Positions 44,801 to 59,349 of a stretch of 64,000 bases of DNA are shown in pieces. Position 1 is the first letter of the stretch. The number at the start of each line of letters is the position of its first letter. Position numbers and translations under genes: made by a program. Source of the stretch: Camelus ferus (taxonomy: Eukaryota); contig NC_045711.1 in assembly GCF_009834535.1 (NCBI RefSeq), positions 11,780,001 through 11,844,000 on the forward strand. Direction: 5' to 3'. The notes below the pieces were generated by a model that was not told the origin of the DNA, did no database searches, and worked only from the letters and a program-made list of their open reading frames with translations.

Positions 44801-47800
44801 CAGAGAGAGAAGGTAGCACACCGCAGTGTGGCCTGGGATGCTGCCCCTTCTGATGCTTGGAGAGACAGGAAACTGCAAATTCAGTTGTGTCCTTCCCTCT
44901 TTCAGCCTTGGTTTTGCTGTTGCCTCTGAAAGGATTCTTGTTCCCCAGGGCTGCTGTTGCCTGCCTAACTGGTATCTTGTAGTTTGCAGCACAAGGCCCC
45001 CTCCTCTGGAAAGCACGCTCTACTCCCACATATAGGATCAAGAGTCTCCCAGCCTCCCCCAAGCCCTCACTACTGCTTTCCTCAGCAGTCCCCAGGTGGG
45101 CACTTCCTGGTAACTGATTTACAACTCTCATCACAGGGTACAAACAAAAGCCCAGGAAGCTCACTCAAGGGACATGCTTTCCACTTTGTCCTTGACCTGA
45201 AAAAGCCTTTGTCCAGGAGGGTTGGCCCTGGGTCACCCTGAGCAAGAGGAGCTGGGGACAAGGTGAGGCCCACCTGGACCAGCAGCTGGGGCACCAGAGG
45301 CTGGTTGATGACAACGATGCCCTGATTGTAGCTGGCCACTCGCGTAGCTGTACGGTTCCTGTTGGACAAGAGGATGTTCTTCCCATGGTTCTCCAGGAAC
45401 TCGAGGGCTGTGGGCATAATGGCCACTTGATTCTGGCCCTGGAGTGGAGGAGAGACTGAGCTGCGGGGGTTGCCGACGCAGGGCCTGAGCCACCCCTCTG
45501 GGCTCTACACGCAGCCTGCATATTAGCCTCTGCCTACCCAGTCCTACCAGGACTGGATCAGAGAGCCCAAAGACCACCTGGTGGCCAATGGTCCACCCAC
45601 TGCCCATCCTTGTACCCTGTGGGTCCTGGTGCTGCCTCTTACTTCCAGGCTGTGCTCCTCGCCCTCATCATCCTCCTCGCCCTCACTGCCAGTGTCCGAG
45701 CTGGGGGAAGGAGGCTGGGTGCCTTCCTGCTCCTCTAGCCTCGAGGAGCTGACAATAGACACACTCCGCACTGGCCCGTAGAGATCCAACACGGCCCACA
45801 CGTTCTAGGGGCACACAGAGCTGGGGAGTCAGAGATCAGTGAAGGACTTCAACCCCACTCCCAGACCCAGCGGAGGTCCTGTGTCTACCTTGGCAATGCC
45901 AGTGGCTGCTGGCCCCATATCCTCTCCATCTACCAGGATGTGCATTGTGTCATCTGCCCCCCGGCGGATGCCTACACGGCTCCCCACCTAGGGCCGAGGT
46001 GAGGCAAGGACGGGTGCTCAGCCCACCTTTCCCCACCACCCCTACCCCCAAGCCCGCCCCTGTGCTGGGAGTCAGCTGCTTCACCCCCAGCCTCTCTAGG
46101 TTCCGGCCATAGTTCATCCTTTGGAGCTGCCCGTCGCGCCTGACTTCACAGCTGGACACCATCCAGGTGGTCTTGGTCCGGAGCTCCGGCAGGGAGGGAG
46201 GCAGCCCGGGGCCGCCACCTGCTCCAGGCCCCATCTCCCCTGGCGCTAGTGTGGTCAGCCCGAGCCGGAGGCAACCTGCCCACTTCTCATCCAGCTCTTC
46301 CACTTTCACCTGAGAGAGAAGCGCCTAGTGGCATGAGCTGGGGGCAAGAGGGAGCAGCCTGGCCCTGCTGTGAATTATATTCCAACAGCCCACCTCAAAG
46401 ACTTCCTCCGTTTTGAGCTCCTTGGTGCTGAAGACGAGGCCATGGGCGTAACCAGCCGCACGCACTGCCCTCGTGCCGTCTTCCTCCAGTGTGATGTTCT
46501 TGCCGCAAGTACTGTGGAATCGATGAGCCACGCCAGCCACTGTGGAAAGATGGCACCAGAGGAAGGGGGAGGACTAGGGCAGGAAGCTTCAGACAGGATG
46601 CAGATAAAACTTTCAGGTGAAGCAGGAAGTTGACATGAAGCTTCCATCTGCATTACTCCTTCAAGACCTCTGACACCTCTCTCACCATAGCAAGACTTGG
46701 TCCCAAATCTGGCATGCCAAGCTATGCTGTCCCGGGCCCTTGGTGACAGGGCAGGGTCCAGGAGCAACCTCCTCCCTCTTCTTGGCTGCTTCCCGCTAGG
46801 GTTGATCCCTCCCTCCTCCCCTCAGTCTGCAGCTGCTGCAGCCAGTCTGGCTCTGAACAGTCCCCAACCTAGAAGCTGCATCCCTTAGGCCCACAGCAGG
46901 CAGGCAGAGCCCACCCACCCTCCCTCCTTGCTGGCTAAACCTGGGGAGTGCAGGGGGAATGACTTCTCAGTGGCGGTGTTGCTGGTCGCCAGGCTATTGT
47001 CCATGGGGCCGGTGGCATTGGTGATGGACACTTGGACGCACTGACCATACAGATCCACGACTGCATATACCTCTGGGTAGGAAAAGAAGGGGTCAGAGGC
47101 CTGATAGCCTGGGGTGAGCTGGGCCGAGGGTGGCGGGTCAAAAGCCACAGAATAGTCACCTTTACCGGGAGGCAAGCCTGAGCAGGCAGCGCCTTGGTCC
47201 TGGCCATTGATGAAGTAGTGCAGGTCACCCTTGGCTGTTCGCATCATGCCGATGCGCGCGCCTGTGCCCAGCGCGTCGAGGTCGCACCCGTAGTTGTTTC
47301 GCATCGTGTTACCATCCTGCATGATGGCTGTGCCGCTGGAGGGACGACAGAGAGGGGCTAGGTCAGCCTCCGAGCTTCCTTCCCATACAGGCCTCTCGAA
47401 CCAGTCTCTGCTTGTCAGAACCTTCCAGTTCCTTGGACTGGGATCTTGATCTGGGGCAGACCCAATCTTGTCTCCTATGTCCCTGGGATCCCCCCAGGGA
47501 AAAGCAGGACCTACCCAAGGGCCTGGGGGGAGGGCTTCCTCAAACTGAAGGGAGGGGGCAACCAGATCTGGTCTGGCATTGTTCATGGCCACCACAGGCC
47601 CCAAACTGATTCCGTCATCCCAACCAGCTCCACCCAGCCCCACCCAGCTGGTCCCCAAAGCACGCAGCTCAACCTCAGCATCCATGTATCGTAGTCAATG
47701 TCTGTCATCGTGTTGGGAAATTCAAGGTCCTCCGGCCGAATAGCGGTCACTCCTGGAAGGAGGCAGGGGTAGGGCAGAGCCAAGGCTGCCTCGGCCTCAG

Positions 47801-47873
47801 AGAGCCAGCACCTCCCCCTAGCATGTGTATGCACACGTCCATGCACGTGCACGCGCACACGCACACACATGCG

Positions 47874-47910
<37 letters not shown>

Positions 47911-50900
47911 GCCCCTTACCAGCCTCAATGGAACCTGACCAGCGGTCCACCATCTTCTGAATGACAATTTCAAACAGCTCTCCATCCCGCAGGGCCCTGC
48001 CAGGGAGAGTGGCCATCAGACAGGCTCCACTGGGGTGGCTGACCCTGGGCAGTAAGAAGGTAGGGACGTGACTGTCCAGACACTGACCGGTTGGAGATGA
48101 CAATGGCGTCATTGAACTCGCTGCGGCAGTTGTGGCGGAGTGCGGTGCGGCCCCCGTTGGTGATGACTGCGTTGCTACCGTGCAGCTGGTGGAAGCGGAG
48201 GTCGGAGCCCCCGGCCCCTGATGACGGGGAGCTTGGAGATGCCTGGTTGTTCCCCTCAGGGAGTGGCTCAGGGACCGGGGGCACCTCTGCAAGAGTGGAC
48301 ATCATCCATTAGATCTACAGTTGTCTCTGAGGCCTCCCAAGGCCATCCCTGNNNNNNNNNNNNNNNNNNNNNNNNNNNNNNNNNNNNNNNNNNNNNNNNN
48401 NNNNNNNNNNNNNNNNNNNNNNNNNNNNNNNNNNNNNNNNNNNNNNNNNNNNNNNNNNNNNNNNNNNNNNNNNNNNNNNNNNNNNNNNNNNNNNNNNNNN
48501 NNNNNNNNNNNNNNNNNNNNNNNNNNNNNNNNNNNNNNNNNNNNNNNNNNNNNNNNNNNNNNNNNNNNNNNNNNNNNNNNNNNNNNNNNNNNNNCTGCAG
48601 CAGCCCCACCTTGCCTACCTCCCCGCTGCAGAGACCTGGCGGTGCCCCCAACTCTCCCACCTTGAGTCGGTCCAGGTTGTGCCCGTATTCGTCCAAGATG
48701 GTCGTCCCATTGTGCATCACCCCATTCCCAGTCATCATCCAGGTCCCTAGGGGGACAAGGAGTGGCAAAGGATATGCGGAGGGAGCCAGGGCTCCTCCCT
48801 TTATGCAGTGGTCCCCACGTTACTCCCCAAAGCCATTAGCCCAGCCTGTCTTTTCTTTGGCAGTTTCTTTCTTCCCAGAGCAGTTCCCCAGCCAGCCACA
48901 GGCCTTGTCCACAGGCCACTTCTCTGGCACTAAATGAGTGGCTGTCACAAGTGTGACAAGTGAAAGAGGGGCCAGAGACCAAGCATCAGGGCTTTGGGGA
49001 CAGCCCCCTCCCTAAGACCTACCCTGGCCCTGCCCTTCTCAGGAGCTCACCAGAGCGCAAGTTGGTCATGGTGGAGGGCAGCTGGAGGTAGGCAGGGTTG
49101 TGGGTGGTGACGCCGATCTCAATGGAGCCAGCCCATTTGTCTACCATCTTGTCGATGCGCACCTGGAACACTTCTCCATCCCGCAGGGCTCTGCTGCTCA
49201 GCACCACGCCGTGATTAAAGTCATCGGTGGCACTGAGGGCGTGGCAAGTGGGGACTCAGAGCCCAACACACACACTGGGTGTGCCAAAGCTTAGCCCAGC
49301 CAGGCCTGCCTGACACCCATTACCCCAAATCAACCAGCTACACTTTGCGGTCCAGGAGAGTCCCCAGTCCTCCATCCAGGATACCCCAGACCAGACACCC
49401 TCTGCCTCCCACTTCTCTACCCCTCCCTCTAATCCCATCAGAGCCCCTTCCCAGGCTTCTCCACACCCCATGGGCCATACTGGGGCCTCAGGGCTGTGCG
49501 TCCCTCGTGGGTGATGGCTGCCTTCTGCCCACAGTTGGGGTGGAAGAGCAGGCGCTCGGGTTCCGCCTGGGCAGCAGGAGCAGCGCGGCGGAGAGCACCC
49601 TCGGGGGAAAGTGCCCGCAGGATGGCATTGTTCCGGCGCAGACGGTCACTATGGTTGTTATTGTGGACGATGGTCACCTTCACGGCCATCCCATACAAGT
49701 CCACCACGCCGTACACCACTGGGGGTGTCAGTGGGGTAGCCACGCCTGTAGGGGTGGAAGACACAGAGAATGGGGGGATGAGGGGAGAAAAGCCAAAAAC
49801 AAGAAAACTCAGTGACAAACAGACAAGATAAGATATAGCTCCCCCTGTCCGAAAGCCCTGACCCAGCGACCCTCTCTGAGCTTCCCCTTACCCTGATCGA
49901 TGCCATTAATGAAGAAGTGGAGGGCAGAGTTGGACTTCCTCGTGAGACCAATGTGGTCGCCCTCCTATTCAAAGCAGAAAAATAACAAGGTTTCAGATTC
50001 GTCCTGGGAACTGTGAGAACAGAGCGGTCCCAGAGCCTTCCCACTACCCTACGTGACAGGGGAACAGCTCCAAAAGGCTCCCATGAGTCTCAGACCACTC
50101 TGAATGCTCAATGCAAGTCAAATACGGTGTTAAACCACCTTATGACTTGTTAACACTCCTGATGATCTGGCGAATACTACCACCAAGCTCGTTTCTAGAC
50201 AATAAAAAGGGAAAAACACTACTAGAGAAGATAGGCTTCTTGCCTCAGATCACTATACAAGTGGCCTAACGAAAAGAACTGAACCCATCTGAGTCCAAAA
50301 TCTGAGTGCCTAACTGTTGGGCAACCCTGCCTTATCAGAAGGAAGCTTCAGGCAAAAGATAAAGAGCCTTGCCCTAGGTCAGAGACCATGGTACGCAGGC
50401 AGGGATGCGCGGTACCCGGGCACCCCTGGAGAGTGGCCCAGGCTCTGTGCCGCACCCTCACCTGCAGCTCATCCAGACCAAATTCACAGTACTCGCGGCG
50501 GGTGCCCTTGCCATTGGTCAGGATCCCGCAGCCACTCATCATGATGGTGCCTGGGGGGAGCGGATACCATGGTTAGGGTACGGCCTCCCTTGGAAACCTC
50601 AGCGACCGCAGGCCTGTGCCCCCACCCTGCTAGGGTCTGGTACCTGACTGTAGGTTGGTCATGGTGGCTGGGTACTCCAAATTGTTGGGGTTGTGGGTGG
50701 TGACACCAATCTCAATGGAGCCCGACCACTTATCTACAAGCTTGTCGATGCGGATCTGGGGTGGAGTGACAGCAGAAGGGAGAGGCGGGGAAGGTAAAGG
50801 CAGAGAAAGGACCTTCATCCCTTGGGCCTTCCCCAGGTCACCCCCTCTTTCCAGCATCAAGGATCGAGCCCGATCTTTAGCTCCCAGAGGGTGAGGTGCT

Positions 50901-53286
50901 AGCCAGACCCCAGGATCCGGCATACCTCAAACATCTCATTGTCCCGGAGTGGGCGGTTGGTCATGACAACCCCATTGTTGAATTCATCCAGGGGCCGGCG
51001 CCGCTCAGCCGTCTTATTGTTGTTGCTGAGTTTGATGAGGGTTCCACATTTCTCGTGAAAAAGGAGGGCATCGTTGGACGTGAGGATGGGCGACGTGGCA
51101 GCACCGCTAGGCCCTGGTGCTCCCCCTGCTGGGGGGGAGCTCAGGTTCACGTTTAGGAGCCCCCCGTTGTAGGCAGACAGGATGGCGTTGCTCACCACCT
51201 CGGAGAGCTCCATGCCAGCAAAGTCTAGGCAGCAGAACGGAGGAAGGAAAAAAGAAATGAGGCTCTACACCCCCAAGCTTGCTGCTCACTCCCTACCCCT
51301 CTCCTGAGGTCCCTCCCTGTCCACCTCANNNNNNNNNNNNNNNNNNNNNNNNNNNNNNNNNNNNNNNNNNNNNNNNNNNNNNNNNNNNNNNNNNNNNNNN
51401 NNNNNNNNNNNNNNNNNNNNNNNNNNNNNNNNNNNNNNNNNNNNNNNNNNNNNNNNNNNNAATAAGGGTTCAGCCCCTGCTGCCAGGCCCACAGCCAGGA
51501 GACCCCCTCCTCTAGCCCCAGCTCTCCCCCCTTCAACAGACTCCGGGGTCTGAGTGGTCCTGCCCACACCCAGCCTCACTTGTCACTATGTCTCCCCCAT
51601 TCCTGCAGCCATTCCCTTATCCCCACCCCTCCATCACTGCCCTAGATGTGTTCTCACCTTCATCCCCAGAGGTTCCCTGCTCAGCCAAGGCAGAATCTTC
51701 AGGTGGGGCAGAGGGCTCAAGGGGAGGCGTGGGGATGGGAGTAGGGGGATTGAAGCCTGGCTCAGGGGGTAGCACGGTGATCTGGGTGCATTTGCCGTAA
51801 AGGTCCACGACAGCCCAGACCCGAGCGGGCAGGCCCGTGGCGGCCACACCACAATCCCGCCCATTCACCCAGAGCCGCAGCTCCCCCGCCACTGTGCGCT
51901 CCACGCCCACACGGTCCCCTTCACCAAGCTGGTCCAGGTCCTGACCATACTCCTCCAGCACAGAACGTCCATCCCTCAGCACCGAGCAGCCTGACACTAC
52001 CCACGAGCCCCCCTTCAGCCCCGTGGCGCTGCTTGGGAAGTCCAGCACACTGGGGTCCAGTGCCGTCACCCCAATCTCAATGGAGCCACTCCAGGAGTTG
52101 ACCTGTGATGGGGTGGTGGACAGAGGCTCAGGATGGGCCACCAATGGGTCTCCCACCACTAGGAAACCACATTTCACAGGTCACTGTGTCCCCCTCTTCC
52201 CACCTTTCAGACAGCTAACTGGCTTCCTTCTCTTGCAACATGAGGCACCACAATCCAGAGATCTAGTCCCACAAGTAATTTTCTGGACTCTGGTCTCGGG
52301 ATTGTTGGGCCCACTCTCCTCTAGCAAATCTGCTCTGCACTCTGGGTGCTCACTGTCTAAGACACCACGCCTTTCTCCACCACGATAGCTAAATTCCCAC
52401 CACGATAGCTAAATCCTCCTCTAACTTCCCTGGTCTCTGTGGCCCCCTGACCACCCAAATGCAGGCCCTTACAGACCACTCTCTTCCTCCAGGCCTAATT
52501 CTCTCCTAGGCTCTGGCTCCACTCAAATTCACTCTCTTCTCAAATTCTATCTCTGTGCACTCACACATCACGCCCAGACACATACACCTTTCTCCCTCAG
52601 TATCTCTGTTCACCCATCTTTCTGGCCCAACCAGTGACTCTGTCCTCCAAAGTTTTTTTTTCTTCTCTTGGTTATCTGTCTTCTTACCCTATCACACCTC
52701 TGATGTGTCTCCATCTTCCATCCCCCAGAAATTTTCCCAGGATGTCTGTTCCTTAGTCATTACAGTGAATGAGCCCCCATGTCCCTTCCCTGCTCTTGGA
52801 TCTTGAGGAAACTTAAGCTCTCCTTGTCTCTTTCTTCATGAAACTTAATGTTTCTGTTTCATGCTCCTCTCCTGCCCATCAGCTGGTGTCCTGTCTGTCG
52901 GTTCTCTCTCGGTGATGTGGGCTACCCTGGGTGTCCTCCCCCATCTCCCTCTGGTCCCCTCCCACCACCTTTCACATTTCGATTCCGCGGCCCCAGCTCC
53001 GCACCTTGCGATCGATGCGGACCGTGAAGATGCGTCCGTCGCGCAAGGGTTCTCGGCTCAACACAAGCCCGTGGTTAAACTCCTGGCCCGGTTGCTGCCG
53101 CCGCGCTGTACGCCCACAGGCCGACAAGCTCACCAAGCGCCCGGTGCGCGGGTGCAGTTCCCCGCCGCTGCTCAGACCCCCGCCAGACCCCGGTCCTGGG
53201 CCGCTCCCGCCCGGGCCCCCACCCCCACCTGGCCCCGGCCCCGGGCCTCCCCCAGAGCCCCCACTCCCACCCGACCCCGCCGCCAT
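41831..53286 (-). CDS. NEURL4: Neuralized E3 ligase-like protein 4 (six NHR domains, centrosomal)
   Basis: Exons 53286-53005, 52102-51658, [small exon in gap 51329-51460], 51224-50926, 50755-50644, 50550-50462, 49964-49892, 49745-49481, 49232-49051, 48746-48661, [exon in gap 48352-48594], 48286-48088, 47996-47920, 47752-47674, 47335-47160, 47072-46941, 46539-46394, 46309-46085, 45987-45889, 45804-45643, 45438-45274, 44717-44559 (mostly N), 44160-43981, 43864-43777, 43683-43576, 43428-43284, 43119-43007, 42929-42764, 42035-41831. Phases are consistent; [10 protein letters not shown]... to ...ALLVRVE*; repeated NHR motifs ([16 protein letters not shown]). Confidence 0.98.
42263..42410 (-). mobile_element. 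tRNA-Ala-derived SINE in last NEURL4 intron
   Basis: Reverse copy with 12-bp TSD tctcatcttctt at 42251-42262 and 42411-42422. Confidence 0.9.
47878..47908 (+). repeat. (CA)n microsatellite in NEURL4 intron
   Basis: About 15 CA units preceded by degenerate (CA/CG) repeats. Confidence 0.95.
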
Positions 53287-54900
53287 CGCCGCTGACACCG
53301 GGGCCGCGCGACAGCCGCGCTTGGCGGCACCGTGGCAACCGCGGTGCACGGACACCCTGAGGGACTAGGACCAGGGGCTGGGGCCAGATATGCTTTACGG
53401 CACTGCCGGGCAATGAACCATCCCGGGCTAGGGAACTAAGGACTATACAGCGGTGGGAACGGAAAGGACGACGGGGTCGGGAAGGTTTGCTTTACGGCAC
53501 GGGCGAGGTGACAGAGTGGCTTCGAGAGGGGTGAAGACAGGCAGAGAGCTTTTACGACAGTGGAAGAAACGCCTGCCGCAGGCATCTTTACGACGAGGGG
53601 GTTGGCGCCCAAACACTTTCAGCTTTGCGACATTGGCACCGACAACCCAGTCTTCGTCGAGTCAGGCAACACCTTAAAGTATTCGCTTTACGGCAGGAGG
53701 AAGAGGTGTCTCTCCTTCTCGCTGCACGTTTGGAAGTGGTGTGAGCGGGGACCGAGGACCCAGAGCAGGGAGCCGGGACCTTTATAAGTGAAAATCTCTG
53801 CCCTCCACACCACTGAGGCCAGATATGTCTCCCAACACTGTCGCAATTCCTCCACGTTTGTATCATAACTCATGAGAGGCAGAGCGGGCCGAGTTTGGGG
53901 GAAAAAGGGCTCGCGTATGTTTCTGGGCAACCCCATCTTGAACCCTAGTCCAGCGAAACTTGGATTTTGAAGCCACGAATAGAGTGCAAAGGGACCCCGG
54001 GAAGCAGTTTCAGGCATCTTCGGTGGTCCCCAAAGATTGCCCAAAAGCTATTAACAACCCATCAGCACAACTCTCCGATGCTCGCGTTAAGGTTAGGGGA
54101 CTGTGACGTCACAATTAGGCTTCTCACCCCATGACCAGGACCCCTGACTGTAATTGGATAATTCGGATGAGGGCGGTGATGGGGGAAGAAGGGCGGGAAC
54201 AAATCCTAGAAACAAAGAAAGGTCTTTGGGTGAGACAGAAAGGGAGGGGCAAGCGGAGAGTTTCCCAAGCCGAGGGCCCTACTTAGTTTTGATTTTGCCC
54301 CCCGCGGCTCCAGGGAGCAGAGGGAGAGGGGACCCGAGCCTCGCCCAAACTTCTCCCGCGCCCCCTGCGGGGGCGGGGCCTCAAGGGCGGGGCTATGTGA
54401 AGCCGGGAGGCGGGGCGGGGTAGCTGAGAGTGGCCCCCTAGTGGGGCCATGGAGAAGCTGGAATCTCTGCGGGCTGCTGGCGGCCTTAACGGGGAATCTC
54501 CTGGAAACAACATAGTCGAGGCAGGCGCCGGGCTGCCCTCCGTAGTCGTGTTTCACGGTTCTGGGCCCCCCATGCACTCCGGGGGAATCGTAACTCGCAG
54601 TCCTGAATCTGGCCAGCTCTCCGAGGGGACAGAAGTCCTCGGTTCCGGGCTCAACCAGCACCCTGGGGAGGTTGCGGGCCACAGCCTTGGGTCTGGCACA
54701 TACCCTGGCGGAACCAGTGTATTCGGGACGTCCAACCTGGGGTTCTCGGGGCCTGGAATGTACAACTCGGAGGACATTCCGCGCTCCGGGTCAACTCGCA
54801 TGTACCCCGACAAACTCTGTGAGGACCGGCCCCGGAGCATCCTAAAAAACAGCAGCTACGCTGTGATGTATAAATCCCCCAGGGCGGAGAGGTAAGGCGC
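52950..54900. promoter_or_regulatory. Divergent promoter region shared by NEURL4 (-) and the PPP1R2-like gene (+)
   Basis: Start codons 1.16 kb apart (53286 and 54449); CpG-rich; CRE TGACGTCA 54104-54111; GC boxes at about 54369-54420; CTCF-like TGGCCCCCTAGTGG 54431-54444. Confidence 0.75.
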
Positions 54901-57563
54901 CCAGGAGGAAGAGGTTCCGCTCTCTGGGGGAGGCGGAGTCACGAGGAAAGGGGCGGAGTCCCAAAAACTAGAAATGAGAGTAGGTGAAGTTAATTGGGTG
55001 GGAAATCTGAGGTTCCAAGTCTATGTGAAAGTAGCACCGGATAAACCCTGACTACGTAGTACGTGATTATCATCAGGTGTGACTCCATCCCCAGCCTCCT
55101 ACACCTCTGGATCTATAAGTACAAGAAAAAGTTTTCGAATGTTTAAAAGAATGAGAGATGGCTGTGAGGAGGAGATCACCAGAAGGTTTCATCCCCATTT
55201 TTTGTATCCTTCCCTCACCCCAAGGAAAAAGTCTCAGCACTGGGATGAAATGAATATCCTGGCCACCTACCACCCTACCGACAAGGACTATGGATTTATG
55301 ACGGTGGATGAGCCCAGCACTCCCTACCACAGGTGCTGAGCCCTCAGCCCTAGCCCTTTGAGAGGAGTGGGGGAGGCCAAAAGGCCTTAGGGACTGGCTA
55401 CTGCCTGCCGCCCCCTCTCAGGCACTACTTCCTGCCTCCTCTGCAGACTGCGGGGCAGCGATGAGGACCTGCTCGCTGGGACCTCCCACACAGTGACTCC
55501 TGAGGAGCTAGCAGAGAGGTGAGTCTTGCCAGAGATCAATAGAAATCTGCTTCCTCCCTTCACCGTTGAACTCTGGGGTCTGAGCCAGCTCTGCTTTTTG
55601 GCCCCCAAAAAGGGAGGTACTGCAATTCTTATCAGGACTCACCCAGGCCAAGGTGGGGGAGTCAGCCATCCCCATCCATTCTTCTCTCCCTTCCGTGCCC
55701 CCAACTAGTCTCCCTCCCCTTCAGGTTTGCAACAATGGACAATTTCTGCCCCAAGATCCTCCTGTACGGTGATAACAGAAGCTCAGGGTCTTCAGACACC
55801 TTTTCCAAGACACGTGAGATGAGGGACAGGGACTGACTGTAAAGGGGAGGTGGAGTGAGCCTTCTGCAAGAGCCTGGCAGGAAAGCCAAACTCTGACACT
55901 GGCCCACAGAATCCAGTGATTTTGAAAAGCACCGCAAGGCACACTACAATGAAGGAAAGTTCCTCAAGCTTCAGAGAAACCTGCCCTTGGATAATAACAA
56001 GAAAAGCAGTGTGGGTAGTGTCAGTGTGAGCAGTGGGGGTCGAGGTGTGGTGTTGGACCCAGAGCCCAGGCCTGCGGAGAGAGGAGGGGCAGGAGGCCTG
56101 ACCAGAGGAGTCAAAGATGAGTTTGGCCTGGTGACCAGAAACGACATCTTGGAAGCCAAAGGTTAGCTGTGGTTGGGCCCCAGAGACCCAAAGGAATTGT
56201 AATCCAGAACGTTCTCTGGTATAGTCTGTCTTCCTCAGTGAGCATCGGCCCAGGGTCCTGTTGCCTGAAAATAAGTCATGCTGGATGGTGACCCTAGGGA
56301 AGACAGGGCAGCTGAGGTGGGGTACCCATCAGGATAGTCCCCAAGGAAGGCTGGCAGGGGAGGAGGAACAGAAAGCCCAAGAGAATCATGGGAGATGGAA
56401 AGGTCACTGACATTTTCCTAAAATGGGAGGAGGTGATAGAAGTGAGAGGAGAAACTGGGGCTTGAGTTTCTCCCAGTGCTGGGAGGGAGGAGCAGTCACG
56501 ATGATACTGGTGGCCTATCTTCCCTAGGTAGCCATAAGACTCAGATTGATTTGGGTGACTCCTCAGATGCCCTTGCCTTCAGAAATCAGTCCCCAGCTTC
56601 AGCCACCACTGTCGTGTTGGGGAAGGAGACAGATCTGCAACGCAAGGAGTATTACAGAAAAGGAAGATACCTGAGGTGCTCTCCCCACCCTGAGCTTGAG
56701 GAGGACACAGAAGATGAGCAGCAGGCCAGTGAGAGCTGGGCCAGGGCAGTCTGGGGGCGGGAGGGCCTAGAACCAACAGACTTCTGGGTGCCCCAACCTT
56801 AGCCCCGTGATGCTTCCAGGCTCCACAGGCTTGAACTGGGTGATTGAAGATCCCATCAGCACCGAAGTCCGTCTGCTGGACCACACCGGAAGCTCCTCAG
56901 AGGATCCTGAGGCCACAGAGAACTCCCTGAAGGTGACAGTGACACCATCGAAGCCTGGTGAGGGCACCAGGCCACCGTCTCACCGGACTTGGCAAGCTCC
57001 CATGCCCCCCACCCCGACTCCCCACCAGTGGATGGACCACAGGTGATGAGCAAGGCCCTAAACATCCTTGTGTGCCAGTCCACGTTGCATGGAGAGGACC
57101 CAGGGAAGCTCAGAGGGATTGGAACCCCCTTCAGCTTGGCACCACCGCTGCCCCCATGCCTCCTTCCTGATTCCTGTCTGCCACCCTCCCGGCTCCAGGT
57201 ACTGCCCTGTCCTCCAAAGACAGTGGGTCCCGAGCAGTGACTGATTGGTGTCAGTGGCTGGCAACCAAGGGGCTGAACTGGCAAAGCACAGAAGTCTCAG
57301 AGAGGGAACCTAGAAGCATCCCAAATTCCTCAAACCAGAGCCAGCACAGACATGAGCCCCGGCAAGGTAGGGCAAGGGGCTGCCTGTGCTGGCCAGGGAG
57401 AGAGAAGGGCCAAGTGGGTAGGTTCTAGGGAGCCTGAGGGTCACATGGGCCAGATCTCACATCTGCTGCAAGAAAGCCACTAGCCAAACCCCTTCTCTCT
57501 CCAGATGAAACCCTGCGGCTTCGATGGACTCAGGAGGAGGAAACCAGACAATGGAAGATGTAG
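54449..57563 (+). CDS. Protein phosphatase inhibitor-2 (IPP-2/PPP1R2)-family protein with long extensions; likely orthologue of mouse 2810408A11Rik
   Basis: Predicted exons 54449-54891, 55225-55332, 55447-55518, 55725-55813, 55910-56161, 56567 (or 56528)-56728, 56820-56957, 57199-57366, 57505-57563; all GT-AG and in phase, 496 or 509 aa. Kozak gccATGG. Motifs [49 protein letters not shown]. Exons 6-9 are less certain than exons 1-5. Confidence 0.85.
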
Positions 57564-57626
57564 CCAGCTGGGGATGGGGTGGGGGCCAGCCTTCCTCTGA
57601 CCTCACCACCCTCAATCGGTGTGGAC

Positions 57627-57632
57627 AATAAA
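57627..57632 (+). terminator. Poly(A) signal of the PPP1R2-like gene
   Basis: AATAAA 64 nt after the predicted TAG. Confidence 0.7.
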
Positions 57633-57879
57633 GAGAAGACTAGCAGGAGTCTGGGTGCTGTGAATGGGGGGGCCATGCTGGGCCTGAGCAGTCTTTGAGA
57701 AGGTGGGGGAGAGAGGGAAGTTCACACCCAGGAAACCACGAGCAGGCAGAGCAGAGAAGAAAGCTTGGAGTGGTCTGGGGGACTGCAACTAGCACCTAGG
57801 AGTCCAAGAAGGCCCTAACGCCATGGGATGAGAGAGGTTGCTGTGATGCAGTCAAACACACACTTACAATATTGTCTTT

Positions 57880-57990
57880 AATTCTTGCAACAACCCAGGA
57901 GGTAGGAGTTATCATCCCCATCTTTCAGATGAGGAAACTGAGGAGTCGGTCACGCAATCAGGAGAATTTGAACCCGTGTCTCTCAGGTCC
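57880..57990. mobile_element. MIR SINE upstream of ACAP1
   Basis: ccccatctttcagatgaggaaactgagg...gaatttgaaccc. Confidence 0.7.
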
Positions 57991-58338
57991 CCATAACTCA
58001 ACCACTGAAGGAGAATGAAGCTGAGAGAGACCAGGGCCCCCAGTAGGAAGGTGACAGCAGATAGCCTCTGAGGGCGGGGCTGTGGCTTCTCTGATCTCAG
58101 GCCCTTCTCCACCGCCCAGGCCCCGCCTCTACCCCTCCCCGGCACAGCCTGGAAGTGCGGAGTGAGAGCTCCTCCAAGGACACCCCTTCCACTTGGGGAG
58201 AAGATCGTGCCCCCCAGAGGCTCTACCCAGCAGAGGACCCTCTCTTCCCTCCTCCTCAACACCCCTCCAGGGGCAGGGAGTGCCTCCACCTGCATCTCCA
58301 CCCTCCTGGCCCCAGGGCCCTGGAGCGGTCAAGCTGAG

Positions 58339-59349
58339 ATGACGGTCAAGCTGGATTTCGAGGAGTGTCTTAAGGACTCGCCCCGCTTCCGGTAAGTGTG
58401 CACAGGTCTGGGGGACAAAGGGTGGGAGGTCCGACACCCCCCAATGTGTACCCACAACCTTCCCCAAGTCGGATGTCCTTCCAGGGAGTAAGTCTCAGAA
58501 AGGGACAAGATGGAGCATCTGGGCCAAAGCAGTACCATTACTATCAAATCTGGTGCTGTGATCCATGTGTGAAGGGGCCTCTCCAGCCTCTCTCACCCCT
58601 AGAGCTGGCATTCCCTCCTCCCTCTCTCAGGGACCCCTGCCCCTCCCCCAGCACCTGCTCTGGGCGGTTAGCAACTTCCTGCCCTCGCCACATCCACCCT
58701 CCTTCTACCCTTCCTGCTCTGGCCTGGGCCACGGTGGCTCTGGTACAGTGAGCAAGCAAGAGAGGTTGGGTGGGCAGTTCTTAACCCATTAGCTTTTTCT
58801 GCCTGTATCCTCCATCCCCGAACCCCAACCCCCACCTCCCTGCCGACGCTGCCCAGGCGGAGGTGGACAGACCAGATGGATGCAAGCTCTGTTCCTATCC
58901 CATTCCTCCTTCCCCAGAGCCTCTATCGAGCTGGTGGAAACTGAAGTGTCGGAATTGGAGACGCGGCTGGAAAAGGTGATCCTGAAGTGGAGAGGTGACC
59001 CAGGAGGGAATTAAAATGAGAAGGGTGGGGCCAGGGAGACACTTGGAGACCGAGAATGAGTGCAAGGGATGACTGAATACAAACCAGGCTGGGTAGATAC
59101 TTGGGGGCTACAAAGAAGCCCAAAGGCAGTTCTGTACCCTGAAGGAGCTTGTGATCTTGAAAGGCAAGATTCACCTGTGAACTTACTTGGTCAGCTCTGG
59201 GGCCCTGTATTATGCGGGACTCTGGGTGCCGCAGGGAGAGCAAGACTGTTTCTGCCCCCAGGGAGCCCACAGACTGCCTGGAAAACAAACCTGTAAAACA
59301 CTTCAACACAAGACAGTAAGGCCTTCCTGGCCGCTGTGTAAAACTGCCT

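What the first reader, a model, noticed from the sequence alone, without database searches (positions are those of the whole stretch)
54449..57632. Intact inhibitor-2-family gene beside ACAP1: probable whole-genome-duplication paralogue of PPP1R2
Seen: a spliced, in-phase ORF of about 9 exons (496-509 aa) with a strong Kozak and its own AATAAA. It carries all three I-2/PP1 contact sites (SILK; RVxF-like KSQHW; active-site helix [12 protein letters not shown]) and the EPSTPY regulatory Thr. Established, from memory: PPP1R2 lies directly upstream of ACAP2 in the same orientation at human 3q29; 17p13 and 3q26-29 are paralogous blocks (ACAP1/2, EIF5A/EIF5A2, SLC2A4/SLC2A2, DLG4/DLG1, TNK1/2); mouse has the little-studied 2810408A11Rik here. 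Inference: the 108-bp phase-2/phase-2 exon 2 mirrors PPP1R2 exon 2 as I recall it. That would make this an ancient intron-containing ohnologue rather than one of the many PPP1R2 retrocopies, i.e. an essentially uncharacterised second I-2 that is over twice the usual size. I do not recall a human protein-coding gene at this position.
Basis: partly seen in the sequence, partly recalled or inferred. Interest (0 to 1): 0.85.

Follow-up and report, generated by a model that had tools for sequence, protein, structure and literature searches.

The report
Second inhibitor-2 gene beside ACAP1
This is a real, intact nine-exon camel gene for a long relative of the protein-phosphatase-1 regulator inhibitor-2 (the orthologue of the mouse testis gene 2810408A11Rik), an old DNA-level copy of PPP1R2 that is already annotated and partly described, so it is solid but only modestly new.

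Summary
Window 54449-57563 (+) carries nine AG/GT-bounded exons giving a 509-aa ORF. It is gapless and 96% identical to NCBI's 509-aa alpaca protein and identical in shared exons to a Camelus ferus isoform.

- **Family:** Pfam IPP-2 hits exon 2 (E 2.8e-16) and exon 5. The SILK, SQHW, Thr-Pro and HYNE motifs are present.
- **Already known:** it is the orthologue of mouse 2810408A11Rik, published in 2012 as testis/spermatid-specific, and it is annotated across mammals.
- **Not a retrocopy:** introns 1-3 share alignment column and phase with platypus, bird and teleost PPP1R2. Intron 4 is one column off with the same phase.
- **Synteny is mirrored:** this gene sits upstream of ACAP1 in camel, alpaca, beluga, bear, wombat and chimp. 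PPP1R2 sits upstream of ACAP2 in a bird, upstream of an ACAP gene in a teleost, and next to ACAP2 in the human gene order.
- **Selection:** dN/dS is about 0.5 overall, 0.3-0.4 in the core and about 1 in the N-terminal extension.
- **Age:** members occur in placentals, marsupials, platypus, salamanders and caecilians. None was seen in fish, frogs or sauropsids, and trees cannot place the duplication. A 2R origin is therefore likely (about 0.65) but not shown.
- **Apes:** the chimp copy has a stop and probably frameshifts.
- **Gaps:** splice junctions could not be checked with reads, and PP1 binding is untested.

The parts
54280..54448 (+). GC-rich upstream region with repeated GGGCGG boxes; presumed promoter and 5'UTR (transcription start not mapped)
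   Evidence: Sequence read. A GC peak of 0.63-0.69 at 54150-54750 is separate from the NEURL4 exon-1 peak at 52950-53550.
54449..54891 (+). Exon 1 (443 nt, ends in phase 2): ATG, about 125-aa fast-evolving N-terminal extension, then the SILK motif (RSILK, aa 129-133)
   Evidence: An exon-1 search finds orthologues. dN/dS is about 1 for aa 1-125.
55225..55332 (+). Exon 2 (108 nt, phase 2/2): KSQHW (degenerate RVxF) and the EPSTPY Thr-Pro site
   Evidence: Pfam IPP-2 E 2.8e-16, profile positions 1-32. Same length and phases as PPP1R2 exon 2 in platypus, Zosterops and Cyprinodon.
55447..55518 (+). Exon 3 (72 nt, phase 2/2): predicted short helix [11 protein letters not shown] spans the exon 3/4 junction
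   Evidence: Intron position shared with PPP1R2. AF2 helix at aa 202-212, the highest pLDDT block.
55725..55813 (+). Exon 4 (89 nt, phase 2 to 1)
   Evidence: Corresponds to the PPP1R2 exon of 92-101 nt with the same phases.
55910..56161 (+). Exon 5 (252 nt, phase 1/1): [12 protein letters not shown], the inhibitory helix with HYNE, then lineage-specific sequence. Skipped in frame in one annotated Camelus isoform
   Evidence: Pfam IPP-2 E 9e-6, profile positions 99-128. Aligned to PDB 2O8A chain I residues 42-161. Isoform P0067 lacks it.
56162..56527 (+). Intron 5, retained in RNA-seq assemblies; read-through stops after one codon and gives the 322-aa product
   Evidence: RNA runs hold 91-100% of its sampled words. 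P0082 (322 aa, Camelus dromedarius) equals model aa 1-322.
56528..56728 (+). Exon 6 (201 nt, phase 1/1): conserved QRKEYYxKGRYLR motif and acidic ELEEDTEDE run
   Evidence: Motif present in 64 of 85 long orthologues. AF2 helix at aa 350-366. Skipped in Camelus ferus isoform P0046.
56820..56957 (+). Exon 7 (138 nt, phase 1/1)
   Evidence: The donor at 56957 keeps the frame and matches the alpaca and Camelus proteins.
57199..57366 (+). Exon 8 (168 nt, phase 1/1): WCQWL motif
   Evidence: Conserved in opossum and placentals. AF2 helix at aa 450-457.
57505..57563 (+). Exon 9 coding part ([18 protein letters not shown], then TAG)
   Evidence: The C-terminal peptide is conserved in elephant, mustelid, opossum and alpaca proteins.
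57627..57632 (+). AATAAA polyadenylation signal
   Evidence: Sequence read.
52972..53286 (-). Neighbour: NEURL4 first coding exon ([10 protein letters not shown]...), divergent from this gene, about 1.16 kb between the two ATGs
   Evidence: ORF list. The same Neuralized-domain neighbour is found in alpaca, beluga, bear and chimp loci.
58339..58392 (+). Neighbour: ACAP1 first coding exon (MTVKLDFEECLKDSPRFR)
   Evidence: A downstream BAR/PH/ArfGap/Ank gene of 740-748 aa is present in wombat, alpaca, beluga, bear and chimp loci.

Best explanation
The locus is the camel orthologue of mouse 2810408A11Rik. It is an intron-containing paralogue of PPP1R2 (inhibitor-2) that sits between NEURL4 and ACAP1.

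What is shown: it encodes a 509-aa, almost wholly disordered protein whose central 135 residues are an inhibitor-2 domain. [quoted passage not shown] It also keeps the Thr-Pro regulatory site.

What is inferred: the protein binds PP1, most likely the testis/sperm isoform PP1 gamma-2, as a 1:1 regulator that blocks or chaperones the active site. Thr180 phosphorylation would release that block, as in inhibitor-2. The conserved C-terminal exons 6-9 would add a function or localisation that PPP1R2 lacks. Exon-5 skipping and intron-5 retention would make forms without the inhibitory helix or without the C-terminal module.

Origin: the gene arose by DNA-level duplication of an ancestral 'inhibitor-2 then ACAP' gene pair, at the latest in the tetrapod ancestor. 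The most likely event is one of the two early vertebrate genome duplications (my estimate 0.65). It has since been lost or disabled in apes.
For: Gene model and agreement with independent annotation. Pfam IPP-2 match. Match to the PP1:inhibitor-2 crystal chain 2O8A_I at E 1.6e-28. Roles of the SILK, SQKW and HYNE motifs: PMC11561318. Motifs are kept in 68-83 of 85 long orthologues.

Orthologues named 2810408A11Rik appear among the hits. The mouse protein is testis-specific, found in round and elongating spermatids and sperm, with an IPP-2 domain at aa 150-277 (PMC3597327). Camel RNA runs labelled 'reproductive system' hold 58-76% of the locus words.

Shared intron positions and phases with PPP1R2 of platypus, bird and teleost. 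Mirrored synteny. ARF-GAP paralogues, including the ACAPs, are attributed to the vertebrate genome duplications (PMC6724607).

The clade of mammals, salamanders and caecilians is split 100/100 from all true PPP1R2. dN/dS is 0.46-0.59 overall (camel versus bear, p = 4e-6 against neutrality). It is 0.3-0.4 in the core and 0.3-0.45 in exons 7-9. AF2 gives mean pLDDT 48.8 with only four short helices.
Against: - No PP1-binding or inhibition data exist for this protein in any species.
- No member of the clade was seen in cartilaginous fish, ray-finned fish, frogs, reptiles or birds. A 2R origin therefore needs several losses.
- In the larger tree the clade attaches inside amphibian PPP1R2, which if taken literally favours a tetrapod-age duplication.
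- The acidic CK2-site cluster of PPP1R2 is replaced by Ser/Gly-rich sequence, so regulation may differ.
- The N-terminal 125 aa evolve neutrally.
Confidence: 0.75

Rival explanations
1. A later small-scale DNA duplication of PPP1R2 in the tetrapod or sarcopterygian stem, whose copy happened to land upstream of ACAP1. On this reading it is not a product of the vertebrate genome duplications.
For: The clade was found only in mammals, salamanders and caecilians. The 56-sequence ML tree joins it to tetrapod (frog) PPP1R2 rather than to the base of the gnathostome tree. A tree holding tetrapod PPP1R2 together is only 4.3 log-likelihood units worse (p-AU 0.21).
Against: This rival needs a coincidence. 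The copy must land immediately upstream of, and on the same strand as, the paralogue of the very gene that follows PPP1R2. The early-duplication topology is equally unrejected (p-AU 0.21). In the smaller tree the attachment point moved to the base, next to sturgeons. The stem branch of 1.0-1.4 changes per site is as long as the whole crown of this fast clade. That fits an older split better, but this is a rough clock inference.
Confidence: 0.2
2. A processed retrocopy of PPP1R2 that later gained introns, like the many PPP1R2 pseudogenes.
For: PPP1R2 has spawned many retrocopies in mammals (PMC3840573).
Against: Introns 1-3 lie in the same alignment columns with the same phase as in PPP1R2 of platypus, bird and fish, and intron 4 is one column off with the same phase. 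The clade lies outside all mammalian PPP1R2 and includes amphibians.
Confidence: 0.01
3. A decaying or non-coding locus in camel whose ORF is preserved by chance, as in apes.
For: RNA assemblies retain intron 5. The N-terminal extension has dN/dS of about 1. The chimp copy carries a stop in exon 7 and apparent frameshifts in exons 6 and 8.
Against: There is a 509-codon open frame across nine exons with intact AG/GT sites. The same frame is open in alpaca, beluga and bear. dN/dS is significantly below 1 in the core and the C-terminus. The PP1-contact residues are nearly invariant across 37 aligned orthologues.
Confidence: 0.04

Closest known systems
Mouse 2810408A11Rik (Bi et al. 2012, PMC3597327)
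   Same: Orthologue. It belongs to the same hit family, with rodent entries carrying that name. The IPP-2 domain starts near residue 150 in both. The mouse protein is testis-specific, present in post-meiotic spermatids and in the sperm acrosome and post-nuclear region.
   Different: Rodent proteins in the hit list are shorter (about 400-440 aa, against 509 in camel). Mouse synteny was not checked here. No biochemical function has been shown for either protein.
PPP1R2 / inhibitor-2 (PDB 2O8A, 2O8G)
   Same: Same Pfam family and the same SILK, SQxW, Thr-Pro and HYNE motifs. Same positions and phases for introns 1-3, with intron 4 one column off and the same phase, and a 108-nt exon 2. Same position directly upstream of an ACAP gene.
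   Different: - 509 aa against about 205 aa.
- It has a 125-aa N-terminal extension and three extra phase-1/1 exons carrying conserved QRKEYYxKGRYLR and WCQWL motifs.
- The acidic CK2-site cluster is replaced.
- It evolves roughly four times faster, judged from branch lengths.
- Only about 40% identity in the domain.
PPP1R2 retrocopies (PPP1R2P1-P10, including PPP1R2B and PPP1R2C; PMC3840573)
   Same: Extra inhibitor-2-like coding sequences, some of them expressed in testis and sperm.
   Different: Those are intronless processed copies that nest within mammalian PPP1R2. This gene has PPP1R2's introns and predates mammals.

Membership tests
Inhibitor-2 family (Pfam PF04979, IPP-2) | Profile match above Pfam's gathering score | tested here: met
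   Exon 2 alone scores 60.8 bits and exon 5 scores 26.8 bits, against a cut-off of 25. All orthologues carry PF04979.
Inhibitor-2 family (Pfam PF04979, IPP-2) | The three PP1-docking elements: SILK, degenerate RVxF (SQKW) and the helix with HYNE | tested here: met
   RSILK at 129-133, KSQHW at 150-154 and HYNE at 249-252. Aligned to 2O8A chain I residues 42-161. The motif definitions come from PMC11561318.
Inhibitor-2 family (Pfam PF04979, IPP-2) | Regulatory Thr-Pro (Thr72/73 of inhibitor-2) | tested here: met
   DEPSTPYH, with Thr180-Pro181. Present in 83 of 85 long orthologues.
Inhibitor-2 family (Pfam PF04979, IPP-2) | Binds and inhibits the PP1 catalytic subunit | not testable with these tools
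   No binding or assay data were found for this protein or its mouse orthologue.
Orthologue of mouse 2810408A11Rik | Same orthologous group, and a position between NEURL4 and ACAP1 | tested here: met
   Rodent hits named 2810408A11Rik have E of about 1e-104 and sit inside the placental clade. The NEURL4 | gene | ACAP1 order is found in alpaca, beluga, bear and chimp. The mouse locus itself was not fetched.
Ohnologue (2R duplicate) of PPP1R2 | DNA-level duplicate: shared intron positions and phases | tested here: met
   Introns 1-3 fall in identical alignment columns, all phase 2. Intron 4 is one column off, phase 1. This holds in camel and bear against platypus, Zosterops and Cyprinodon PPP1R2.
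Ohnologue (2R duplicate) of PPP1R2 | Lies in a paralogous block, with paralogous neighbours in the same order and orientation | tested here: met
   This gene is followed by ACAP1 (window). PPP1R2 is followed by ACAP2 in a bird, with APOD upstream, and by an ACAP gene in a teleost. The human order is ACAP2, PPP1R2, APOD ... TNK2. The ACAPs are attributed to the vertebrate genome duplications.
Ohnologue (2R duplicate) of PPP1R2 | The tree places the split before the divergence of jawed vertebrates | tested here: inconclusive
   The attachment point moves between trees. AU tests give p = 0.21 for both alternatives. No outgroup sequences were available.
Ohnologue (2R duplicate) of PPP1R2 | Members present in early-branching vertebrates (cartilaginous or ray-finned fish) | tested here: not met
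   Only tetrapod members were seen. The 'inhibitor 2-like' entries of Narcine and Polyodon group with true PPP1R2. Only the best 120 hits of each search are listed, so absence is not proven.

The most novel reading that the evidence does not exclude
The gene is the surviving 2R twin of PPP1R2. It became specialised as a spermatid and sperm PP1 gamma-2 regulator with an added C-terminal module, and was lost independently in fish, frogs and sauropsids. It was also disabled in apes including humans, where testis-expressed PPP1R2 retrogenes (PPP1R2B, PPP1R2C) may have taken over its role. Mouse and livestock would then have a sperm phosphatase regulator that men lack.
Probability: 0.15. Interest if true: 0.55.

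Novelty: already known. Interest (0 to 1): 0.35.

Why it matters
PP1 gamma-2 and its inhibitors control sperm motility and maturation. Most mammals, but apparently not apes, carry this second, long inhibitor-2. It would be a species-dependent part of that control, which matters for mouse models of male fertility and for livestock reproduction. The 2013 evolutionary study of the PPP1R2 family (PMC3840573) covers the retrocopies and does not mention this intron-containing copy. The intron and synteny evidence gathered here adds that missing branch to the family history. The gene itself is not a discovery.

Tried and rejected
- **Wrong exon-7 donor:** my first model used the donor at 57042 and broke the frame. 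The donor at 56957 replaced it.
- **Read evidence lost:** There is therefore no read-level junction evidence.
- **Intron-only run search:** this was meant to show splicing. Instead it showed intron 5 fully present in the RNA assemblies.
- **Failed locus look-ups:** none was found for platypus-like P0140, seal PPP1R2 P0232 or caecilian-like P0247. The Pleurodeles locus came back without DNA. Amphibian and monotreme synteny is therefore untested.
- **My splice mapper:** it produced spurious tiny terminal exons for the bird and the fish. These were corrected by direct checking.
- **Trees and AU tests:** they could not date the duplication.
- **Structure prediction:** AlphaFold2 with 37 orthologues gave a disordered model (pLDDT 48.8), so no fold search was run.
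- **Other searches:** the ESM Atlas returned only IPP-2 clusters. Literature searches for newer gene names or knock-outs found nothing beyond the 2012 paper. A word search of earlier scan findings gave no hit.
- **Retrocopy idea:** rejected on intron positions.
Full report
**1. What is in the sequence**

Reading window 53800-58400 and assembling exons gives a nine-exon gene on the + strand. Every intron has an AG acceptor and a GT donor.

| Exon | Coordinates | Length | Note |
|---|---|---|---|
| 1 | 54449-54891 | 443 nt | ATG |
| 2 | 55225-55332 | 108 nt | |
| 3 | 55447-55518 | 72 nt | |
| 4 | 55725-55813 | 89 nt | |
| 5 | 55910-56161 | 252 nt | |
| 6 | 56528-56728 | 201 nt | |
| 7 | 56820-56957 | 138 nt | |
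| 8 | 57199-57366 | 168 nt | |
| 9 | 57505-57563 | 59 nt | includes TAG |

- The total is 1530 nt, or 509 codons.
- The intron phases are 2, 2, 2, 1, 1, 1, 1, 1.
- A first try with the exon-7 donor at 57042 broke the frame.
- The ATG context is GGGGCCATGG.
- AATAAA lies at 57627-57632.
- A separate GC-rich stretch with GGGCGG boxes precedes the ATG.

NEURL4's first coding exon is on the minus strand, with its ATG near 53286. ACAP1's first coding exon starts at 58339. The gene therefore fills the NEURL4-ACAP1 gap.

**2. Independent confirmation of the model**

- A search with exon 1 alone found a 278-aa Camelus dromedarius protein at 99% identity, plus longer proteins in other mammals.
- The 509-aa model aligns end to end, without gaps, at 96% identity to NCBI's 509-aa Vicugna pacos protein.
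- It is identical, in the shared exons, to a Camelus ferus isoform. The window is therefore from a Bactrian-type camel.
- Annotated camel isoforms skip exon 5 or exon 6 in frame, or stop just inside intron 5. The last of these is the 322-aa product.

**3. What family it is**

- Pfam IPP-2 (PF04979) matches exon 2 at E 2.8e-16 (profile positions 1-32) and exon 5 at E 9e-6 (positions 99-128). The other exons match nothing.
- The core matches the inhibitor-2 chain of the PP1:inhibitor-2 crystal structures 2O8A and 2O8G at E 1.6e-28, over inhibitor-2 residues 42-161.
- The motifs through which inhibitor-2 binds PP1 are SILK, the degenerate RVxF (SQKW), and the helix whose HYNE occludes the active site. 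Mutating HYNE abolishes binding (PMC11561318).
- Here these motifs read RSILK (129-133), KSQHW (150-154) and HYNE (249-252). The regulatory Thr-Pro is kept as EPSTPY.
- Among 85 orthologue entries of at least 380 aa, SILK-type sequence is found in 83, SQxW in 74, Thr-Pro in 83 and HYxE in 68. The misses are consistent with exon-skipping isoforms.
- AlphaFold2 with 37 orthologues predicts a disordered chain (mean pLDDT 48.8). It has four short helices, at 202-212, 240-250 (the HYNE helix), 350-366 and 450-457. This is as expected for an inhibitor-2-like protein.

**4. It is already known**

- A full-length orthologue used as query returned 146 proteins, all with PF04979. They come from Xenarthra, Afrotheria, Laurasiatheria, rodents, tree shrew, colugo and strepsirrhine primates.
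- Most are called 'uncharacterized protein LOC...'. Several rodent entries are called 2810408A11Rik.
- Bi et al. 2012 (PMC3597327) described mouse 2810408A11Rik as a 'novel protein phosphatase inhibitor' with an IPP-2 domain at residues 150-277.
- They found its mRNA only in testis. The protein was in round and elongating spermatids and in the acrosome and post-nuclear region of sperm. The acrosomal signal was lost on capacitation.
- No binding or inhibition test was reported. I found no later functional paper.
- The main evolutionary study of the PPP1R2 family deals with intronless retrocopies and does not mention this gene (PMC3840573).

**5. Not a retrocopy**

I fetched PPP1R2 loci and mapped their coding exons exactly.

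| Gene | Coding exon lengths (nt) | Intron phases |
|---|---|---|
| Platypus PPP1R2 | 158/108/81/92/192/44 | 2,2,2,1,1 |
| Zosterops (bird) PPP1R2 | 146/108/78/101/180/71 | 2,2,2,1,1 |
| Cyprinodon (teleost) PPP1R2 | 131/108/87/95/192/17 | 2,2,2,1,1 |
| Camel gene | 443/108/72/89/252/201/138/168/59 | 2,2,2,1,1,1,1,1 |

- On a protein alignment, introns 1-3 fall in the same columns with the same phase in both gene types.
- Intron 4 is one column off, in a gapped stretch, with the same phase.
- The camel gene is thus PPP1R2's six-exon plan with a longer first exon and three extra phase-1/1 exons before the last one.

**6. Synteny**

- The order NEURL4 (minus), this gene (plus), ACAP1 (plus, 740-748 aa, BAR/PH/ArfGap/Ank) is found in alpaca, beluga, brown bear and chimp.
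- In wombat the gene is followed 2.7 kb later by a 740-aa ACAP on the same strand.
- In the bird the order is a lipocalin (APOD), then PPP1R2, then, 9.3 kb on, a 780-aa ACAP on the same strand.
- In the teleost, PPP1R2 is followed 3.6 kb later by an 862-aa ACAP on the same strand.
- The human 3q29 gene order is ACAP2, PPP1R2, APOD, MUC20, MUC4, TNK2 (PMC7793333).
- The two or three paralogues of each ARF-GAP type are attributed to the early vertebrate genome duplications (PMC6724607).
- The same two-gene unit therefore exists twice, once with ACAP2 and once with ACAP1. This is the strongest argument that the pair was duplicated together.

**7. Age and phylogeny**

- A search with the domain part of an orthologue found clade members in opossum, wombat, wallaby, glider and platypus. 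The platypus entry is distinct from platypus PPP1R2. Members were also found in axolotl and Pleurodeles.
- A search with the axolotl protein added Lissotriton and two caecilians. It added no frog, reptile, bird or fish member.
- In trees of 45 and 56 sequences, the clade of mammals, salamanders and caecilians is separated from all true PPP1R2 with 100/100 support.
- The 'inhibitor 2-like' entries of a ray and a paddlefish are ordinary PPP1R2.
- The point where the clade joins the PPP1R2 tree is unstable. It sits near sturgeons in the small tree and inside frogs in the larger one.
- AU tests reject neither tetrapod PPP1R2 as one group (p 0.21) nor bony-vertebrate PPP1R2 as one group (p 0.21).
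- No outgroup was available.

The sequence data therefore set a minimum age at the tetrapod ancestor and say nothing firm beyond that. The long stem branch (about 1.0-1.4 changes per site), compared with the clade's own crown depth, fits an older split. This is a rough inference.

Weighing the mirrored synteny against the missing fish members, I put a 2R origin at about 0.65 and a tetrapod-stem duplication at about 0.2.

**8. Selection**

I extracted exact coding sequences from the alpaca, beluga and bear loci and compared them with the window by the Nei-Gojobori method.

| Region | dN/dS | Camel-bear p against neutrality |
|---|---|---|
| Whole gene | 0.46-0.59 | 4e-6 |
| Inhibitor-2 core (aa 126-262) | 0.3-0.4 | 7e-4 |
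| Exons 7-9 | 0.3-0.45 | 2e-4 |
| N-terminal 125 residues | about 1 | 0.6 |

The core and the C-terminal module are under constraint, and the N-terminal extension is not.

**9. Expression in camel**

- RNA runs labelled 'reproductive system' hold 58-76% of the sampled words of 54300-57700.
- The same runs hold all of intron 5. Unspliced or intron-retaining RNA is therefore present, which fits the annotated 322-aa product.

**10. Primates**

- The only anthropoid entries are short. Chimp LOC107969131 is 230-238 aa and ends after exon 3.
- Capuchin products are 126-167 aa; the two checked (166 and 167 aa) lack exons 1 and 5.
- A Celera-era human partial, hCG2036610, is 375 aa. Exon 4 is replaced in it, and it carries SILR and HYDK in place of SILK and HYNE.
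- In the chimp locus all nine exon homologues are still detectable, in order, between NEURL4 and ACAP1.
- Exon 7 there carries an in-frame stop.
- Exons 6 and 8 align in two different frames, which suggests frameshifts.
- Introns 1 and 4 are about 1 kb longer than in camel.
- The ape copy is therefore disabled, at least from exon 6 onward.

**11. Verdict**

The gene is a genuine inhibitor-2 paralogue that kept PPP1R2's introns and its ACAP neighbour. It is under purifying selection, and it most likely acts as a PP1 regulator in male germ cells. That function is inferred from motifs and from mouse expression and has not been shown.

The gene is annotated and its mouse orthologue is published, so it counts as already known. 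The genome-duplication origin is probable but unproven. The ape loss is a small extra point of interest.

Noticed in passing
window 55910-56161 and 56528-56728: Annotated Camelus isoforms skip exon 5 or exon 6 in frame. Skipping exon 5 removes the HYNE inhibitory helix. That would give a form keeping SILK and SQHW but without the active-site block.
   Followed up: partly
window 56162-56527: Intron 5 is fully represented in RNA-seq assemblies from reproductive-system samples. Read-through gives a stop after one codon and matches a deposited 322-aa Camelus dromedarius protein.
   Followed up: partly
L008:6001-11301 (chimp locus): The chimp copy keeps all nine exon homologues between NEURL4 and ACAP1. 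It has an in-frame stop in exon 7, two-frame alignments in exons 6 and 8, SILR for SILK and HYDK for HYNE. A human Celera prediction (hCG2036610, 375 aa, partial) shares these changes.
   Followed up: partly
window 56528-56728 (exon 6) and 57199-57366 (exon 8): Two conserved motifs have no counterpart in PPP1R2 and no Pfam match: QRKEYYxKGRYLR, also recognisable in platypus, and WCQWL, present in opossum. Both are predicted helical. Their function is unknown.
   Followed up: partly
window 47583-48292, minus strand, inside NEURL4: A (TG)n/(CA)n microsatellite shows up as runs of CVCVCV in the ORF translations within a NEURL4 intron.
   Followed up: no
L002:10001-13960 (wombat): The NCBI wombat model of this gene has a 423-nt second exon where placentals have exons 2-3 (108 + 72 nt) and two introns. 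This is probably an annotation that reads through introns.
   Followed up: no
window 12061-51460: Nine runs of N of 132-243 bases, several of them inside NEURL4.
   Followed up: no
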